IMG/VR virus record: IMGVR_UViG_3300017917_003822 | Location: 186,001-250,000 of that record | DNA length: 64,000 nt | Reading direction: 5' to 3' (one strand) | The notes under the pieces: model-generated | Databases searched by the model: none | Told to the model about the DNA's origin: nothing | Seen by the model: the letters and a program-made list of their open reading frames with translations, nothing else | Program-made: the position numbers and the translations under genes | Shown here: piece by piece, positions 19,231 through 29,719 of the stretch | Position numbering within the stretch: the stretch's first letter is position 1 | How the letters are laid out: each line of letters starts with the position of its first letter

Positions 19231-19234
19231 TTAA

Positions 19235-19266
19235 TTTTTTTATTCCGGATTCATTCCATACATTTG
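19235..19266 (+). promoter_or_regulatory. T-tract/CG-N11/TAnnTTTG promoter
   Basis: CG 19246-47, TACATTTG 19259-66. Confidence 0.7.
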
Positions 19267-19270
19267 CAAG

Positions 19271-19873
19271 ATGGTAAATAATTTCGACAGAATCCGAGAA
19301 CTGCTTAAATTCCCGGACAGTAATTCATTTTACTTTCTTCAGATATTAAAAAGAAGAAAGGATAATCCAGATCTTGGTAAAGATATGGTGCATATTGCCG
19401 ACTATTACATTTATAGTCTAGAGCAGTATGATGCCATGCAGAAGGACATTATCGATCTTTGTAATTCAAAGAACGCTAGAGCGTACTTTAGACTTAATTT
19501 AAGGGACGCTAATAAGGTCGCTATGCAGACTTTGAAGCGTGTGGTAGATCATATCACGTCTGGAAATTATAAGGCCGTAAAGAGCGCCTATGCGTCCTGT
19601 ACGGGTGAGTATGCATCTGATCCCGATAAGACATGGATCGTTGACATAGACTATAAAGATCTAGAAGGAGACATTGACATGAACATTAATGCAATCATTG
19701 CTCATGTACAGGCTCTAATATTTGAAACTGGGAGAGATGACACCGTTCATACCATCCCTACCAAGAATGGACTTCATGTGATATGCAGACCGTTTAATCT
19801 AAGTAAATTCCGTCAGGTTTATCCATCAATAGATGTACACAAGGATAACCCTACGATATTATATTGTCCATAA
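19271..19873 (+). CDS. putative archaeo-eukaryotic primase (AEP)-like protein
   Basis: WIVDID and TKNGLH resemble AEP motifs I and II. Confidence 0.5.
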   Translation: MVNNFDRIRELLKFPDSNSFYFLQILKRRKDNPDLGKDMVHIADYYIYSLEQYDAMQKDIIDLCNSKNARAYFRLNLRDANKVAMQTLKRVVDHITSGNYKAVKSAYASCTGEYASDPDKTWIVDIDYKDLEGDIDMNINAIIAHVQALIFETGRDDTVHTIPTKNGLHVICRPFNLSKFRQVYPSIDVHKDNPTILYCP

Positions 19874-21321
19874 TGGCTAAAACTAAAACTAAAAAACCCA
19901 TAATTAATCTTGAGACTCTTAACTCGGATCAGGCTAAAGCTTTTGACGAGTTAAGAGATTTCATCTACGACAAGTCCGACGACAGCGTTTACGTGCTAAA
20001 GGGCTGGGCAGGAACAGGTAAAACCTACTGTGTGAGTTTGCTTGTAAGATACGCACTTGAAGTCATACATCCGACACACAACTGGTATAAGATAGCAGTT
20101 ACTGGTCCAACTAATAAATCAGTAAGAGTTATCAAAAAAACCAGTGGACTAAGAAACTCTAGGGTGACTTTTCAAACAATTCATAAGCTTCTTGGACTGA
20201 CCGAGAAGATTACTAATGATGGTAAACAAGAGTTTGTCAATCAGGGAGAATTTAAACCGCAGATCAATTCAATTCGTTTACTTATTATTGATGAGGTTTC
20301 TATGCTCAATGATGATTTATTTCACGAGATTCTGAAATATCGAGAAAAGATTAAAATCATCTGCATGGGGGATCCTGCACAGATTCCACCAGTAGGAAGA
20401 CCAGATTGTATTCCATTTAGAGAAGAACTTGCTGAACATTACAGAATAAAGACTCTAGATCTTAAACAAATCATGAGGCAAAAAGAGGGTAATGCCATAA
20501 TCGATGCTTCAGTTGTGATCAGAAAGGAGCTTTATTCGAACAGACTTAGTATCGACAACGTGTCTAAAGTGAATGAGAATGGCGAGGGTATCAAGTTTTT
20601 AAATCTCAATTGTGCTGAGACGCGTAAGGGATTTTCAGAAAAACTGAGACAGTATTTTGTAACTGAGGATTTTGTAAAAGATTCCGAGTATGCTAAAGTG
20701 ATAGCATGGAGAAATAAAACGGTAGCAACTATGAACAACATCATCAGAAAAACAATCTATGGAGACGTTGCGGAGGGTACTAAAATTCTGGAAGGTGAAA
20801 AACTTATCGCCAACAACCCAGTCATCGAAGACAAGATTATTATATTGAATACCAATGATGAGTTTACTGTTGAGCGTTACACTATAGAAAAGGACACAGC
20901 AAGATTTGTTATTGATGATCATCCCGATGCGGAACCACTGTCAGTTGAATTAAACTATTATGACACGGAGGTAAGTTACCTGAATGATGCAGATGAGGTT
21001 GTTAAGGTCTGGATTAAGATACTACATGAGAGTAGTGAGGTTGAATTTCAGAAGGTTGCTAACATTCTTAAACTTCGAGCAATACAGAAGAGAGGAAAGG
21101 ATAAATCTTGGCTTCATTATTATAACTTTCTAAGAAGATTTGCTGATGTAAATTACGCTTATGCAATCACCGCACACAAATCCCAAGGAAGTACATATAA
21201 CACAACATTCGTTCTGGAGGATGATATTGATATGAATCTGGACATAGTGGAAAGAAACAGAATCAAATATACAGCCTATACAAGAGCGAGTAGAAAGCTC
21301 TATGTTCTAAAGAGATTCTAG
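19873..21321 (+). CDS. SF1B helicase, Dda/RecD-like
   Basis: GWAGTGKT, TIHKLL, IIDEVSM, GDPAQIPP, AITAHKSQGS, YTAYTRA. Confidence 0.9.
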   Translation: MAKTKTKKPIINLETLNSDQAKAFDELRDFIYDKSDDSVYVLKGWAGTGKTYCVSLLVRYALEVIHPTHNWYKIAVTGPTNKSVRVIKKTSGLRNSRVTFQTIHKLLGLTEKITNDGKQEFVNQGEFKPQINSIRLLIIDEVSMLNDDLFHEILKYREKIKIICMGDPAQIPPVGRPDCIPFREELAEHYRIKTLDLKQIMRQKEGNAIIDASVVIRKELYSNRLSIDNVSKVNENGEGIKFLNLNCAETRKGFSEKLRQYFVTEDFVKDSEYAKVIAWRNKTVATMNNIIRKTIYGDVAEGTKILEGEKLIANNPVIEDKIIILNTNDEFTVERYTIEKDTARFVIDDHPDAEPLSVELNYYDTEVSYLNDADEVVKVWIKILHESSEVEFQKVANILKLRAIQKRGKDKSWLHYYNFLRRFADVNYAYAITAHKSQGSTYNTTFVLEDDIDMNLDIVERNRIKYTAYTRASRKLYVLKRF

Positions 21322-21324
21322 TTA

Positions 21325-21356
21325 TTTTTTTTATCCGGGATTATTTGATAGATTTG
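21325..21356 (+). promoter_or_regulatory. T-tract/CG-N11/TAnnTTTG promoter
   Basis: CG 21336-37, TAGATTTG 21349-56. Confidence 0.7.
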
Positions 21357-23321: not shown

Positions 23322-24110
23322 ATGAGCGAGAGTAAATCTCTATTTAAGGCCTTTATCAGGGTGGTAAAATCCATCTCGGAAAGGGATAATTATTTCCTTG
23401 GTGGATTTGGTGCGGTTGAGGTTGTGAGAGAACCTCTAATAGAGGCCAAAGACAAATCTGAGGTTAAGAAGATATTACTGGAGAGATATCCCCAATTTTT
23501 TACCAACGGTAAAGTCCACGAAAGAGAAACTAAGGATAATGCTCAATTTTTCTATGTTGTAATATACCCTCTATACGAATGGGAGAAAAAACAAATCGAA
23601 GAGGGAGAATGGATATGTGAAAGTTGTGGACATATTCATGAAAATCAATATCTGTCAAAACCAAGAATTAACGAGAGGTTATTTGGAACAGATAAGCTCT
23701 TCTGTAGGAGTGACGAGGATCTTTGTCTGGAGAATTACAAGAAGGAATATTATAAGGATGTAGATCTTCCAGATGATCTAGCATACATCAAAAAAGATAG
23801 TCCAAATTACATCTATAAATGTACGGAGAAAGCAACAGGTAAAAGCTACATAGGTAAAACTAGAAATGCTCCATTCTTTAGATGGTGGAATCACCTAACG
23901 CACTCAAGCAGTCCCTTTGGAATTTATCTAAGACAAACCAAATTGAGTGATTGGACTTTCGAAGTTCTTGAGGAGCTGCCAGGAAATATTGATGAGAGCG
24001 AAGTTTTTAGAATAGAATCTGAGTACATAATGAAATACGATAGCATTCAGAATGGCTATAATACGGTAATTAGTAATAAGAAGGTTCTGGCTGATAACAA
24101 CGATAACTAA
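23322..24110 (+). CDS. GIY-YIG nuclease domain protein with Zn-binding region
   Basis: YIYKC......SYIGKT...RWWNH, E...I..Y.....GYN; CESCG. Confidence 0.7.
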   Translation: MSESKSLFKAFIRVVKSISERDNYFLGGFGAVEVVREPLIEAKDKSEVKKILLERYPQFFTNGKVHERETKDNAQFFYVVIYPLYEWEKKQIEEGEWICESCGHIHENQYLSKPRINERLFGTDKLFCRSDEDLCLENYKKEYYKDVDLPDDLAYIKKDSPNYIYKCTEKATGKSYIGKTRNAPFFRWWNHLTHSSSPFGIYLRQTKLSDWTFEVLEELPGNIDESEVFRIESEYIMKYDSIQNGYNTVISNKKVLADNNDN

Positions 24111-24161
24111 CTTTTTGTAGCTTGTTTCAGTTGCAAATTATTAGCTAAACATGTAAAAATT

Positions 24162-24353
24162 ATGGATAAGTGGAATTACGATAAAAGAGTTAGAGAATTA
24201 TCTCAAAAAATTGAACAGTATAAAATACACGCTAAACGTGAAATTGAAAACAATAAAGTTTGTCATCCAAGCAAAGTGAGAAATAATTCTCAACGATATT
24301 TGGAAATCTGTAAACAAAGGTATAAGGATTTTACAGGTGAGGACTATGAATAA
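24162..24353 (+). CDS. cassette gene 1, hypothetical
   Basis: 63 aa; followed by TTGCTTATAAC core. Confidence 0.65.
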   Translation: MDKWNYDKRVRELSQKIEQYKIHAKREIENNKVCHPSKVRNNSQRYLEICKQRYKDFTGEDYE

Positions 24354-24363
24354 TTTTTATTGC

Positions 24364-24418
24364 TTATAACGTTCCCACGCTTGGCGAAGTGGCGGATGTA
24401 AAGCACTAAATTTTTAAT
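24364..24418 (+). repeat. attC-like half-site A (right arm missing)
   Basis: TTATAAC-GTTCCCACGCTTGGCGAAGTGGCGG...CACTAAATTT; no complementary arm follows. Confidence 0.6.
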
Positions 24419-24428
24419 TAAACAAATT

Positions 24429-24647
24429 ATGAAAAAGAACAAAACTCGAAATATAGACAAACAACTTCAAAAATTGTTATATGAACAATATGGTGAAGAA
24501 TACACTCAATGGTATATGAAAACTTTTGATGTTAAATTATATTTTGATGGAGCGGAAACATCAGATAGAGGTTATTTAACAGATAGAGAGTTTGACGAAT
24601 GGAAAGAAGAAAAATGGAAACAATTTTTGTCCAAGTATGGTTATTAA
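24429..24647 (+). CDS. cassette gene 2, hypothetical
   Basis: 72 aa; followed by ATATAAC core. Confidence 0.65.
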   Translation: MKKNKTRNIDKQLQKLLYEQYGEEYTQWYMKTFDVKLYFDGAETSDRGYLTDREFDEWKEEKWKQFLSKYGY

Positions 24648-24658
24648 AAATTTATTAT

Positions 24659-24791
24659 ATATAACGTTTTCCGTGTATAATAAGTGGCGTACACGATAAA
24701 CCAAGCCACTAAATTTAAAAATTAACTTTAAAATACAAAACAAATGAAAAATTTAAAACTTAGAAGCCATTTTTTATACACGTTGTTATGT
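24659..24791 (+). repeat. attC-like site B
   Basis: TAAC(24662)-GTTTTC-CGTGTATAATAAGTGGC pairs with GCCATTTTTTATACACG-TT-GTTA(24785-88). Confidence 0.8.
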
Positions 24792-25028
24792 GTAGTTTTT
24801 TTAACATCTTGTAATTGTGATAAACAAAAAAAAGAAATTATTATTGAAGAAAATAATCATCAAGAAGATTATTACATTTACAATGATACATTACAAAATA
24901 ATGCAATTCAAGAAAAAAATAATAGTAGCGGTGTAGGTATCACAACAAGTAGTAAATTAGGTGTAGAAGTAACAGAAGGTGTTTATATTAATTCAAGCGG
25001 TGAGTTAGAATTAGGATTTGGTTTGTAA
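24744..25028 (+). CDS. cassette gene 3, putative lipoprotein
   Basis: MKNLKLRSHFLYTLLCVVFLTSC lipobox; start lies inside site B. Confidence 0.7.
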   Translation: MKNLKLRSHFLYTLLCVVFLTSCNCDKQKKEIIIEENNHQEDYYIYNDTLQNNAIQEKNNSSGVGITTSSKLGVEVTEGVYINSSGELELGFGL

Positions 25029-25034
25029 AATTAC

Positions 25035-25157
25035 ACATAACGGTTTGCGTATTGGCGTTGTTGCCAATACTGATGTTAAATTGAAAAACTAAATTTGAAA
25101 TATATGGAAAATGACAATATGAAACAAGAAGGCAATAACGCTAATACGCTGTTATCG
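25035..25157 (+). repeat. attC-like site C
   Basis: TAAC(25038)-GGTTT-GCGTATTGGCGTTGTTGCC pairs with GGCAATAACGCTAATACGC-T-GTTA(25151-54). Confidence 0.8.
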
Positions 25158-25352
25158 GCAGTTGTTGTTCATCCACATCCGATAATTGAAATGCAAATAA
25201 AGAACTTTAAAAAAGATGAAGTTGGCTACATCGCTGAATGTATTTTATACAACAAAGAATTTAAAGAAGTAGAAAGCTCATTCTTTATTGACGAATATAG
25301 AGCCAACGAAATCATTGATTTAATGCAGACGTTTTTGAACAATTGCCGATAA
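25104..25352 (+). CDS. cassette gene 4, hypothetical
   Basis: ATG 25104 or 25119 inside site C; stop codon is the TAA of the terminal core AACAATTGCCGATAA. Confidence 0.65.
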
Positions 25353-25536
25353 AAAATATATTGATAATACTTCATCTATACACACTTTAAGACATTCATC
25401 ATTTACAAATTTACTAGAATCTGGAACAGATTTAAGGATAATTCAAAAAATTGCGGGACATTCAAGTTCCAAAACAACAGAAATCTACACCCATGTTTCG
25501 AATAATATCCTAAATAAAGTAAAACTTCCGATTTAA
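25351..25536 (+). pseudogene. C-terminal fragment of a tyrosine recombinase (XerC/D-integrase family); not in ORF track
   Basis: [61 protein letters not shown]; HxLRH, GH and catalytic Tyr present; in-frame TGA at 25336 and no start codon. Confidence 0.9.
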
Positions 25537-25568
25537 TTTTTTTATGTCGAGATAATTAATTACTTTTG
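25537..25568 (+). promoter_or_regulatory. T-tract/CG-N11/TAnnTTTG promoter
   Basis: CG 25548-49, TACTTTTG 25561-68. Confidence 0.7.
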
Positions 25569-27232: not shown

Positions 27233-28312
27233 ATGAAATACGACATAAACATATTAAATAGCTATATTGATAATGGGCTGCTGGAAAAAAACCCACATCC
27301 AACATTACCTCTCGATATCTACAACTACTCCCGGGAGTGCCAATTTTCACGTCATTGGGATGAGATAACCCTCAACATGAGGGGCACAGTCTTAGACAGA
27401 GATGGAAATGTAGTAGCAAGAACATTTTCAAAATTCTTCAATCTGGAAGAACATCAACCCGAAGAAATTCCAAATGAATCATTTGACGTTTTTGAAAAAA
27501 TGGATGGTTCACTGGGTATTTTATTTAATTACAACGATCAGTGGATATTTGCAACTAAGGGATCATTCTCGTCAGATCAATCAATCAGAGGTAAGGAAAT
27601 TTTGGAGAAGTACGACTATCAAAGTCTAGCGAAAGATTGCACATATTTATTCGAGATCATATATCCAGAAAATAGAATTGTCGTCAGCTACGATTTCGAA
27701 GATCTAGTACTATTAGCAATCATCAATAACGAGGATGGCTATGAATATGACATACACTCGGAGGAGGCGCTTTCTGATGTACTGGATATCAAGGGTTTTA
27801 GAATTGTTAAAAAATACCATGGAGTTCAGGACTATAAGGAGCTTAAGAAAATCATAGATAACAATGCAGAGGGATTCGTCATCAGATTCAAATCTGGTTT
27901 CAGAATGAAGATCAAAGGGGAAGAGTATGTTAGACTCCATCGGCTTCTAACAAACTTCTCGAACATTGACATCTGGGAACTTTTGAAGAATGGGGAGGAT
28001 CTTGGTAATTTTCTGGACAGAGTTCCTGATGAATTTGATCTCTGGGTCAAGAATATTATCTCAGATCTAAGAAGACAGTACCTGGTAATCGAGGAATCAG
28101 CACATGAGGTCCATTCATCATTCTTTGTTGCGAGACCAGATTTTTCGAGAGAAGCGGGAAAGAAAGAATATGCTCTGTGGGTTAAAGAACAAGAAAAGAA
28201 TTTGCAAGGTATATTATTTTGTCTGTATGACGAGAAAAGGTATTCGGATCACATTTGGAAAATGATAAGACCGAAATACCAAAAACCATTTTGGAACAAA
28301 ATTGAGGATTGA
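27233..28312 (+). CDS. RNA ligase, T4 Rnl1 family
   Basis: KFFN, EKMDGSLG, ATKGSF, FEIIYPENRIV, EGFV, KIK. Confidence 0.88.
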   Translation: MKYDINILNSYIDNGLLEKNPHPTLPLDIYNYSRECQFSRHWDEITLNMRGTVLDRDGNVVARTFSKFFNLEEHQPEEIPNESFDVFEKMDGSLGILFNYNDQWIFATKGSFSSDQSIRGKEILEKYDYQSLAKDCTYLFEIIYPENRIVVSYDFEDLVLLAIINNEDGYEYDIHSEEALSDVLDIKGFRIVKKYHGVQDYKELKKIIDNNAEGFVIRFKSGFRMKIKGEEYVRLHRLLTNFSNIDIWELLKNGEDLGNFLDRVPDEFDLWVKNIISDLRRQYLVIEESAHEVHSSFFVARPDFSREAGKKEYALWVKEQEKNLQGILFCLYDEKRYSDHIWKMIRPKYQKPFWNKIED

Positions 28313-28313
28313 T

Positions 28314-28955
28314 ATGAAAATTATATTAGAAAAAAACCAGAATTTATATTTCACGAGTGATACACACTATAATCACTCCAATATTTGCCGGGGAACGTCA
28401 AATTGGCCAGGCGGAAGAGGAACCCGAAATTTCCATTCACTTGGAGAGATGAACGATGCCATAGTCTCTGGGATCAATTCTATTGTAGGTCCTGACGATT
28501 ATCTTGTTCATATGGGAGATTGGAGCTTTGGTGGATTTGAATCTATCATAGAATTCAGAAAAAGAATAGCATGTAAGAACATTATTCTTTTCCTCGGGAA
28601 TCACGATCATCATATCAGAAACAATAAGGAAGGTGTTCAAGGATACTTTAGAAAAGTTTCAAGCTACGATGTACTGGATATTAGAAGACCGGAAGGAAAG
28701 GAAACTGCTAAATATCAATTTGTATGTTGTCACTTTCCCATAGCAAGTTGGGACGGCATGAACAAGAAGGTTCCACATCTACATGGTCACGTTCACTTGC
28801 CTCCAAATTTAAAAATTCACGAGGGGAGAGCAATGGACGTTGGAGTAGATGGAAACAATCTACAACCCTACAGCTTAAATGAAATATTAAAGATCATGAA
28901 GGATCGTCCAATTAAACATTTGACTTTACCAAAAGACCATCACACAGAGGAATAG
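28314..28955 (+). CDS. calcineurin-like metallophosphoesterase
   Basis: SDTH, GD, GNHD, HFP, HGHVH, DVGVD. Confidence 0.88.
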   Translation: MKIILEKNQNLYFTSDTHYNHSNICRGTSNWPGGRGTRNFHSLGEMNDAIVSGINSIVGPDDYLVHMGDWSFGGFESIIEFRKRIACKNIILFLGNHDHHIRNNKEGVQGYFRKVSSYDVLDIRRPEGKETAKYQFVCCHFPIASWDGMNKKVPHLHGHVHLPPNLKIHEGRAMDVGVDGNNLQPYSLNEILKIMKDRPIKHLTLPKDHHTEE

Positions 28956-29099: not shown

Positions 29100-29273
29100 A
29101 TGATAACACAAGAAATTTTAAACACTTTTGTCTTCGATACAATCGGGGGAGAAAAATTTGGGGTCAATGATCCAATAGCTCATGATGAGATTATTGGATA
29201 CTATCCATCGAGAGAGGAAGCAGAAAAAGCTTTCATTGAGTACGTAGAAAAAGAAGGTATAATATTCGAATAA
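29100..29273 (+). CDS. small hypothetical protein (not in ORF track)
   Basis: MITQEILNTFVFD... 57 aa; TAATG overlap with the next gene. Confidence 0.6.
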   Translation: MITQEILNTFVFDTIGGEKFGVNDPIAHDEIIGYYPSREEAEKAFIEYVEKEGIIFE

Positions 29274-29719
29274 TGGAAAATTCAAGAACTGGATACAGTA
29301 TAATTAAACCAACCATGTTTCTCATAAGAGGAATCCCAGGATCTGGTAAATCGACATTTGCAAATCACATCTGGAACGAGTATGCAATCTGCGAAGCAGA
29401 CAAATACTTCATAGACAAGGAAACTGGTGAATATAAATTTGATGCCTCTAAGCTGAAGGATGCGCATGAATGGTGCAGAAATGAAGTTGAGAACAGAATG
29501 AAAGAACATCATCTTAATCCACAGTACTATCCTGAAATAGCAGTGTCCAATACATTCACCCAAGAATGGGAAATGCAAAATTATCTGGATCTTGCTGATA
29601 AGTATGGTTATCAGGTTGTTTCTTTGATAGTGGAGAACCGACACGGAGGATCGAACGTTCACAACGTTCCGGAAGAAACCTTGGATAGAATGAGACAAAG
29701 ATTTGAAATTAAACTATAA
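29273..29719 (+). CDS. P-loop kinase, polynucleotide-kinase (AAA_33)-like
   Basis: RGIPGSGKST, EAD.YF, SNTF, HNVP. Confidence 0.8.
   Translation: MENSRTGYSIIKPTMFLIRGIPGSGKSTFANHIWNEYAICEADKYFIDKETGEYKFDASKLKDAHEWCRNEVENRMKEHHLNPQYYPEIAVSNTFTQEWEMQNYLDLADKYGYQVVSLIVENRHGGSNVHNVPEETLDRMRQRFEIKL

What the first reader, a model, noticed from the sequence alone, without database searches (positions are those of the whole stretch)
25338..25536. Integrase is truncated exactly at the last cassette core (GATAA|AAAATAT)
Seen: the last core lacks the final C of TAAC and runs directly into integrase codons K-K-Y-I, leaving 61 codons with no start (in-frame TGA at 25336). Inference: the lost segment ended precisely at the expected crossover position. 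This fits an integrase-mediated deletion or insertion at a TAA site in its own gene (e.g. an ancestral GTT AAA AAA TAT), which would freeze the array and favours the TAA|C crossover model. A simple 3-nt microhomology deletion is the alternative.
Basis: partly seen in the sequence, partly recalled or inferred. Interest (0 to 1): 0.62.

Follow-up and report, generated by a model that had tools for sequence, protein, structure and literature searches.

The report
Decayed phage integron: integrase stump at cassette edge
A 270-kb phage carries the stump of an integron-like gene-capture system: one deletion joined the exact end of the last gene cassette to the last 61 codons of the recombinase gene, but the sequence cannot tell whether the recombinase cut its own gene or an ordinary short-homology deletion did it.

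Summary
Window 25351-25533 encodes the last 61 residues of a tyrosine recombinase. It has no start codon and an in-frame TGA at 25336. It is the only integrase-like sequence in the 270,629-bp phage genome.

The DNA just upstream is a complete mobile cassette. Its 82-aa ORF has 29 same-length homologues. In five independent loci that ORF ends with the same GATAA, followed by C and a different hairpin site and a different next gene. In the window, integrase codons follow instead of the C.

About 100 related phage contigs show the intact system: a cassette array, an attI-like site, then a ~267-aa Xer/IntI-like integrase. Most of the closest intact genes read TAT-AAA-AAA-TAT at the break, so cassette core and integrase gene probably shared ATAA.

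The TAA|C boundary is backed independently. However, the same 10-nt spot in the integrase gene is a recurrent breakpoint in at least five other loci. None of their left ends lies exactly at a core, and those I could reconstruct show 3-5-nt microhomologies.

My estimate: microhomology deletion ~0.5, integrase-mediated secondary-site recombination ~0.33, other ~0.17. Read support could not be checked.

The parts
25351..25536 (+). Integrase remnant. It is the last 61 codons (KKY..LPI) plus the stop of a ~267-aa Xer/IntI-like tyrosine recombinase. It keeps the box II residues (HTLRH, GH, catalytic Y in TEIYTHV) but has no start codon.
   Evidence: aligns to residues 207-267 of the L018 integrase, 93% aa identity
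25348..25352 (+). GATAA, the right-hand core of the last cassette without its C. TAA at 25350-25352 is the natural stop of the cassette ORF. The junction lies at 25352|25353, or anywhere in 25349-25352 if the ancestor read TAT AAA.
25336..25338 (+). TGA in the integrase frame, closing that frame 5 codons upstream of KKY.
25041..25352 (+). Cassette 4. It comprises C, a short hairpin site (stem 25052-25059 / 25066-25073), the promoter-like motif ACTAAATTT at 25088, and a complete 82-aa ORF at 25104-25352.
   Evidence: homology between loci starts right after TAAC and ends at GATAA
24665..25040 (+). Cassette 3 (ORF 24744-25028, 94 aa). It ends in the core ATAAC at 25037-25041.
24370..24664 (+). 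Cassette 2 (ORF 24429-24647, 72 aa). It ends in the core ATAAC at 24661-24665. A homologue in L250 shares sequence up to ATAA|C and not beyond.
24111..24369 (+). Cassette 1 (ORF 24162-24353, 63 aa). It ends in the core ATAAC at 24366-24370. The left edge of the array is less clear (GATAAC TAAC at 24102-24111).
23322..24110 (+). A 262-aa ORF flanking the left end of the array, with a GIY-YIG-like C-terminal half. The match is weak: E 6e-4, 20.6 bits, below the 22.6 cut-off. A GIY-YIG/NUMOD3 gene sits at the same place in L010/L011.

Best explanation
WHAT IT IS (high confidence, ~0.9). The low-GC island at 24.1-25.6 kb is the decayed remnant of a phage-borne integron-like element.

In intact relatives the order on one strand is:
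- an array of small cassettes;
- an attI-like site (consensus ..TTGnnnnTAA|C TATTATATATA) about 55 nt upstream of the integrase start;
- a ~267-aa Xer/IntI-like tyrosine recombinase.

Each cassette consists of C, an imperfect hairpin site whose base pairs ATAAC with GTTAT, a promoter-like motif, an ORF, and a final ..TAA. The site therefore lies upstream of its ORF, and cassette ORFs run in the same direction as the integrase.

In this phage a single deletion of at least ~680 bp joined the last base(s) of cassette 4 (..GATAA) to codon 207 of the integrase. It removed attI and 206 codons. That left four cassettes that can no longer be moved in cis.

HOW THE DELETION AROSE (inferred, ~0.5). A microhomology-mediated deletion (replication slippage or end joining) used the 2-4 nt shared by the cassette core (ATAA|C) and the integrase codons (probably TAT AAA). 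It occurred at a spot in the integrase gene that breaks recurrently in this family. On this reading, the match with the cassette edge arises because every cassette core contains ATAA, and perhaps because a deletion that spares a complete upstream ORF is tolerated.
For: System:
- About 100 related loci have an intact integrase and the conserved upstream site.
- The arrays carry TAAC / 5-nt spacer / stem / loop / stem / GTTA sites. These fold as long hairpins with z-scores of -3.2, -5.3 and -5.0.
- Cassette boundaries were mapped from shared cassettes.
- The own genome has no second integrase and no attI-like site.

Mechanism:
- Five other independent deletions end within about 10 nt of the same spot, and none has its left end exactly at a core. 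L060: left end 8 nt before the core, TTA shared. L015: A-run to A-run inside the gene. L312: about 5 nt (AAAAG) shared, ancestral left side inferred. L241: left end 28 nt inside a site. L017: left partner not reconstructed.
- A deletion elsewhere in the gene (L052) also uses a 6-nt microhomology. Short-homology deletion is thus the process seen at the junctions I could reconstruct.
- The KKY spot scores -5 to -23 bits on the attI profile, against at least +15.6 for true sites. It is rarely the best pseudo-site in the gene.
Against: - In a model ancestor, about 250 different deletions with at least 4 nt of microhomology could end in that 10-nt zone. At most 5 of them start at a core. An exact hit on a cassette edge is therefore a 2-8% coincidence per event.
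- The microhomology is only 4 nt, or 2 nt if the ancestor had TAC.
- A-runs of 6 or more occur 2-6 times per integrase gene. The A-run alone does not explain why this one is the hotspot, so an unidentified site-specific break may be involved.
Confidence: 0.5

Rival explanations
1. Integrase-mediated deletion. The element's own recombinase, or one supplied by a co-infecting relative, recombined the core at the end of cassette 4 (or attI just after it), cutting ATAA|C, with a secondary site TATAA|A in its own gene. The intervening DNA was excised as a circle and the enzyme was destroyed.
For: - The left partner is cut exactly at the position where cassettes are exchanged in this family.
- Most close relatives have ATAA at the right partner. 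Natural cores also include CAA|C variants, so a TAC ancestor fits too.
- Seen on the strand that reads TAA|C, the order attC, attI, integrase matches a canonical integron, where the cut is G|TT (equivalent to AA|C). IntI1 is known to use secondary sites (my own knowledge of the integron literature).
- Under random microhomology, an exact hit on a core has only a 2-8% chance.
Against: - In none of the other independent truncations whose junctions I examined does a core partner lie at the join. L002/L037 and L047 were not reconstructed.
- The right-hand site is a poor match to the attI profile and lacks the invariant C.
- The right end coincides with a breakpoint used by events that are clearly not core-to-core, which this model must treat as chance (about 1 in 10, as there are 8-12 ATAA per gene).
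Confidence: 0.33
2. A site-specific break at the KKY spot made by another agent, followed by loss of the DNA to its left. The agent could be an IS200/IS605-type TnpB element once inserted there, or a phage homing endonuclease.
For: - In L010/L011 a TnpB element sits exactly between ..ATT TAT and AAA AAA TAC.., and the 61-codon tail continues after its right end.
- A second TnpB element interrupts the L004/L005 gene after another ATTTAT.
- HNH and GIY-YIG genes flank these arrays.
- Breaks cluster more tightly than A-runs alone would explain.
Against: - The window's genome contains no TnpB and no trace of an IS end.
- As far as I know, IS200/IS605 left-end cleavage is tied to the element's own hairpin, and TnpB cuts 15-21 nt into the target. 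Neither predicts a junction at the first A (my own knowledge).
- The left flank CCGAT is unlike the ATTTAT target.
Confidence: 0.08
3. Insertion model: a block of cassettes was inserted into the integrase gene at TATAA|A, and the 5' part of the gene was lost later.
For: It would give the same right-hand junction.
Against: - It needs a second deletion, because no 5' integrase part exists anywhere in the genome.
- The array's left edge abuts a GIY-YIG-like gene, as it does in the intact relative L010.
Confidence: 0.04
4. Assembly artefact: two real molecules were joined wrongly at this point.
For: Reads could not be checked.
Against: - The two sides share at most 4-11 nt, far below an assembler's k-mer.
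- Both flanks are in the expected order and orientation for this element.
- Independent contigs (L060, L241) show comparable natural truncations.
Confidence: 0.03

Closest known systems
Integrons (IntI, attI, attC cassette arrays; e.g. class 1, Vibrio chromosomal integrons)
   Same: - A tyrosine recombinase sits next to a simple attI-type site, followed by an array of small cassettes.
- Each cassette has an imperfect hairpin site whose outer boxes read ..TAAC and GTTA.. and pair with each other.
- The exchange point lies inside AA|C (equivalent to G|TT).
- The same cassette is found in different arrays.
   Different: - The integrase is ~267 aa and lacks the IntI-specific insertion. It scores below the IntI model cut-off (155-158 bits against 265, in two stretches) and is nearest to XerA-type models.
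- Cassette ORFs lie on the opposite strand relative to the site. The site is therefore upstream of its ORF, and the ORFs point towards the integrase and run in its direction.
- Cassettes carry their own promoter-like motif.
- The carriers are large lytic-type phage genomes.
CALINs (clusters of attC sites lacking an integron integrase), including those reported in phages (Qi et al. 2023, PMC9892861)
   Same: The window now holds an array of cassette sites without a working integrase. Phage-borne attC clusters have been reported.
   Different: Here the integrase remnant and the exact deletion junction are preserved, so the route from a complete element to an orphan array is visible. The sites were not tested with IntegronFinder's attC model.
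IntI1 recombination at secondary (non-attC) sites
   Same: One true site recombines with a short, degenerate site elsewhere, giving deletions or insertions at a fixed cut (my own knowledge).
   Different: It is not shown to operate here. The putative secondary site lacks the base equivalent to the conserved G/C and scores poorly on the attI profile.
Promoter/stem-loop cassettes (PeSLs) of T4-type phages
   Same: Small phage ORFs are each preceded by a stem-loop and a promoter, and are shuffled between genomes (my own knowledge).
   Different: PeSL shuffling is ascribed to homologous recombination without a dedicated recombinase. Here a dedicated integrase and attI accompany the arrays.

Membership tests
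Tyrosine recombinase (Pfam PF00589) | C-terminal catalytic region with the R..H-x-x-R..H/W..Y residues | tested here: met
   The fragment matches PF00589 at E 1e-13, profile positions 123-170 of 172. HTLRH, GH and TEIYTHV are present. The first catalytic Arg and Lys lie in the deleted part.
Integron integrase (IntI; TIGR02249 / PRK15417) | The IntI-specific additional domain, and a score above the family cut-off | tested here: not met
   Intact relatives L018 and L029 score 155-158 bits against a cut-off of 265, in two stretches that skip the insertion. The best model is XerA-type, at 171-184 bits against a cut-off of 220. PDB IntI4 also matches in two stretches. The window's own fragment is too short to test.
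Integron (system) | An attI site adjacent to the integrase gene, where cassettes are added | tested here: not met
   The window and its whole genome have no attI-like site (profile score of 12 or more: none). In relatives, a conserved site lies ~55 nt upstream of the start in 45 of 59 loci examined.
Integron (system) | Cassette sites that are imperfect inverted repeats with paired outer boxes (RYYYAAC / GTTRRRY) | tested here: inconclusive
   Relatives show clear long hairpins with an ATAAC:GTTAT base, z -3.2 to -5.3. The window's three sites are short and fold weakly (z -0.05 to -1.7), and only one has a GTTA box. IntegronFinder's attC model was not available.
Integron (system) | Cassettes are discrete mobile units found in different contexts, with boundaries at the core | tested here: met
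   The ORF4 cassette occurs in 5 contexts and the ORF2 cassette in 2. Homology begins after TAAC and ends at ..TAA|C.
Integron (system) | Promoterless cassettes transcribed away from intI from a common Pc promoter | tested here: not met
   The ORFs point towards and run with the integrase. Each cassette has its own ACTAAATTT motif before the ATG. Promoter activity was not tested.
CALIN | Two or more attC sites with no integron integrase nearby, as called by IntegronFinder | not testable with these tools
   Three internal cores and no functional integrase are present, but the defining software and model were not available.

The most novel reading that the evidence does not exclude
The junction may be a fossil of a recombinase cutting its own gene. 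A previously undescribed family of phage-borne, integron-like gene-capture elements uses a Xer-like integrase without the IntI insertion, with cassette ORFs inverted relative to canonical integrons. In this phage that family would have self-inactivated by recombining a cassette core with a secondary site in the integrase gene. This would map the cleavage to the 5' side of the C in TAAC, and would show one way in which orphan cassette arrays arise.
Probability: 0.33. Interest if true: 0.78.

Novelty: new variant of a known kind. Interest (0 to 1): 0.6.

Why it matters
1. The finding led to a large, coherent family of integron-like elements. More than 100 loci were fetched, many on phage contigs of 50-350 kb. 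My literature searches found no description of it. Its integrase is not an IntI by the usual criteria, so standard integron finders would call these arrays orphan attC clusters at best.

2. The window preserves a base-exact record of how a complete element becomes an integrase-less array.

3. If the integrase made the deletion, the junction fixes the cleavage position and gives a natural example of self-targeting. If it did not, the recurrent breakpoint at codons 206-208 is itself an unexplained hotspot worth testing.

The cassettes are small ORFs of unknown function in lytic-type phages. They are candidates for host-takeover or anti-defence genes.

Tried and rejected
- Frameshifted rather than truncated integrase: rejected. 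The upstream ORF is an unrelated, complete cassette gene. tblastn with 54 intact integrases finds only residues 207-267 in the window.
- Pseudo-attI at the KKY spot: profiles of the whole site and of its right half give poor scores and middling ranks.
- IS-mediated origin: the genome has no TnpB. Kept only as a minor rival.
- A cassette-4 end next to attI: the pattern gave two loci that did not look related.
- Sister genome: the downstream 189-aa gene has no relatives in IMG/VR. The metagenome scan found no integrase tail closer than 92% aa. DNA search of the phage record collection gave one unrelated 146-nt hit.
- The motif ATAACG alone is not enriched genome-wide (97 found, about 106 expected). 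Only the composite of core, hairpin and ACTAAATTT is specific to the island.

Full report
THE OBSERVATION

The window is bases 186,001-250,000 of a 270,629-bp virus record, estimated 99% complete. At 25348-25359 the sequence reads GATAA followed by AAAATAT. In frame from 25351 it encodes 61 residues that end in a stop at 25534-25536. That frame has TGA at 25336 and no ATG, GTG or TTG.

The 61 residues match the end of the Pfam phage-integrase profile (positions 123-170 of 172, E 1e-13). They include HTLRH, GH and the catalytic tyrosine. A profile search of the whole genome finds no other integrase. The island at 24.1-25.6 kb has 29% G+C, against about 37% around it.

IS GATAA REALLY A CASSETTE EDGE?

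Yes. The ORF that ends in that TAA (25104-25352, 82 aa) has 29 homologues. Most of them are 79-85 aa, and nearly all those aligned end in ..NNCR-stop, so the ORF is complete.

I fetched its homologues in five independent contexts. In each, the gene ends ..TGCC(G/T)ATAA followed by C. After that come a different hairpin site and a different next gene. L007 and L009 encode the identical protein yet diverge right after GATAAC(GG).

Upstream, the loci become alike immediately after a TAAC. They share the short hairpin and an ACTAAATTT motif before the ATG. A second cassette of the window (ORF 24429-24647) has a homologue in L250, and similarity again stops at ..ATAA|C.

The mobile unit is therefore: C, site, promoter-like motif, ORF..TAA. 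The window holds four such units. Their cores are at 24366, 24661 and 25037, and the fourth is the truncated one at 25348.

THE INTACT SYSTEM

phmmer with the 61-aa fragment found relatives of 87-92% identity. Scans of viral and metagenome contigs with the fragment, and of genome contigs with the intact L018 integrase, gave 240 loci.

In the viral and metagenome loci examined, the integrase is nearly always intact, 265-270 aa, and continuous through ..SCQKI(Y/F/V)-KKY...

About 55 nt upstream of its start lies a conserved site, consensus AATTGCTTATAA|CTATTATATATA. The sequence to the left of TAAC varies from locus to locus. Further upstream are arrays of up to 25 or more small ORFs. They are separated by sites of the form TAAC, 5 nt, stem, loop, stem, TT, GTTA(T/G). 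These fold as long hairpins whose base pairs ATAAC with GTTAT (z -3.2, -5.3, -5.0).

Read on the strand that shows TAA|C, the order attC-like sites, attI-like site, integrase is that of a canonical integron. The difference is that the cassette ORFs lie on the other strand, so they run with the integrase.

The integrase is not an IntI by the usual test. It scores 155-158 bits on TIGR02249 (cut-off 265), in two stretches that skip the IntI-specific insertion. It is nearest to XerA-type models (PDB matches).

Bacterial relatives are at most about 50% identical, and mostly from Bacteroidota. The one exception is a 2-kb Chitinophagales MAG contig at 67%. In bacteria, attI-like hits mostly lie on the opposite strand, in several loci just downstream of the gene.

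The only related literature I found reports attC clusters in some phages (PMC9892861). Nothing found describes this family.

WHAT WAS LOST

Compared with intact relatives, the window lacks attI and codons 1-206. That is at least ~680 bp if cassette 4 was the last one. No attI-like site remains anywhere in the genome. The array is thus frozen unless a co-infecting relative supplies the enzyme.

The remnant has no internal stops. It is 93% identical in protein but only 80% in DNA to its nearest relative. This suggests the loss is recent relative to that divergence.

THE ANCESTRAL CODON

Before KKY, the closest relatives by DNA have TAT (L018, L023, L038 and others) or TAC (L028, L020, L026). A more distant KKYLGE clade has GTT. 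With TAT, the gene read TAT AAA AAA TAT, as in L002. Cassette core and gene then shared ATAA. With TAC they shared AA.

WHICH MECHANISM?

For the integrase model:
- The left partner is cut exactly where cassettes are exchanged.
- In a model ancestor, about 250 distinct deletions with at least 4 nt of microhomology could end in the 10-nt zone around KKY. At most 5 of them begin at a core.

Against it, the same zone is a recurrent breakpoint whose other partners are not cores:
- L060: the left end is 8 nt before the attI core, judged by comparison with L043, and TTA is shared.
- L015/L016: an in-frame deletion inside the gene, between two A-runs.
- L312: about 5 nt (AAAAG) shared, with the ancestral left side inferred.
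- L017: the N-terminal domain is fused at codon ~207.
- L241: a cassette end plus 28 nt of the next site is joined at codon ~208.
- L010/L011: a TnpB insertion sequence sits exactly between TAT and AAAAAA, and the 61-codon tail resumes after it.

Deletions at other positions also exist: L002/L037 at codon 106, L047 at 168 and L052 at 198. The last uses a 6-nt microhomology.

The KKY spot scores far below true sites on the attI profile and is seldom the best pseudo-site in the gene. Conversely, A-runs of 6 or more occur 2-6 times per gene. The A-run alone therefore does not explain the hotspot, and its cause remains open.

Weighing these points:
- None of the other reconstructed events is core-to-core, so the prior for integrase action is low.
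- The likelihood ratio favours the integrase by roughly 2.5-10.

I put microhomology deletion at about 0.5, integrase-mediated recombination at about 0.33, another site-specific break (IS or nuclease) at 0.08, the insertion model at 0.04 and an assembly error at 0.03.

An assembly error is unlikely because the two sides share at most 4-11 nt. However, reads could not be checked.

VERDICT

The boundary model TAA|C is supported by independent comparisons. The claim that the integrase truncated itself is plausible but unproven, and has an equally good or better rival.

The larger result is the family of phage-borne integron-like elements that this remnant belongs to.

Noticed in passing
L010:10500-11920, L011 and L005:940-2040 (related phage contigs): IS200/IS605-type TnpB elements are inserted in the integrase gene, right after ATTTAT. 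In L010/L011 the insertion lies between codons 205 and 206. In L004/L005 it lies just after the catalytic tyrosine codon. L005 also has an in-frame TAA in the N-terminal domain.
   Followed up: partly
related loci L015, L017, L312: Three independent in-frame deletions fuse the N-terminal SAM-like domain directly to the last ~60 residues. All three keep the frame, which may mean that a mini-protein is selected rather than that mutation is biased.
   Followed up: partly
window 19231-19266, 21321-21356, 25533-25568: The motif TTAATTTTTTTAT..CGG.. recurs after genes, including right after the integrase stop. A similar string follows the integrase in L010. It is probably a regulatory element of the phage backbone that marks the right edge of the element.
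   Followed up: no
window 24405, 24708, 25088 (also 56385): ACTAAATTT lies 15-35 nt before the cassette start codons and is conserved with the cassette in other loci. It resembles the Bacteroidota -7 promoter box TAnnTTTG (my own knowledge), which hints at a Bacteroidota host.
   Followed up: partly
window 23322-24110; L010:2016-2582; L011:1233-1897: A GIY-YIG (/NUMOD3) homing-endonuclease-like gene sits at the left edge of the array, both here and in a relative. An HNH gene follows the integrase in L002/L003.
   Followed up: no
L002:8001-8726 (= L003, L037): Here the integrase lost its N-terminal domain instead. Residues 106-267 are fused in frame to the first ~90 codons of a cassette ORF, and that ORF's paralogue, with a duplicated upstream region, lies just before it.
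   Followed up: partly
L322, L332, L336, L345, L353, L359 (bacterial MAG contigs): In bacterial relatives of the integrase (40-50% identity), attI-like profile hits lie 100-300 nt downstream of the gene on the opposite strand. The gene is thus inverted relative to the phage arrangement.
   Followed up: no
window 19864-21321, 27233-28312, 28302-28955, 29273-29719: The island is embedded among phage replication and RNA-repair genes: a Dda/PIF1-like helicase, a T4-type RNA ligase, a metallophosphoesterase and a P-loop kinase.
   Followed up: no
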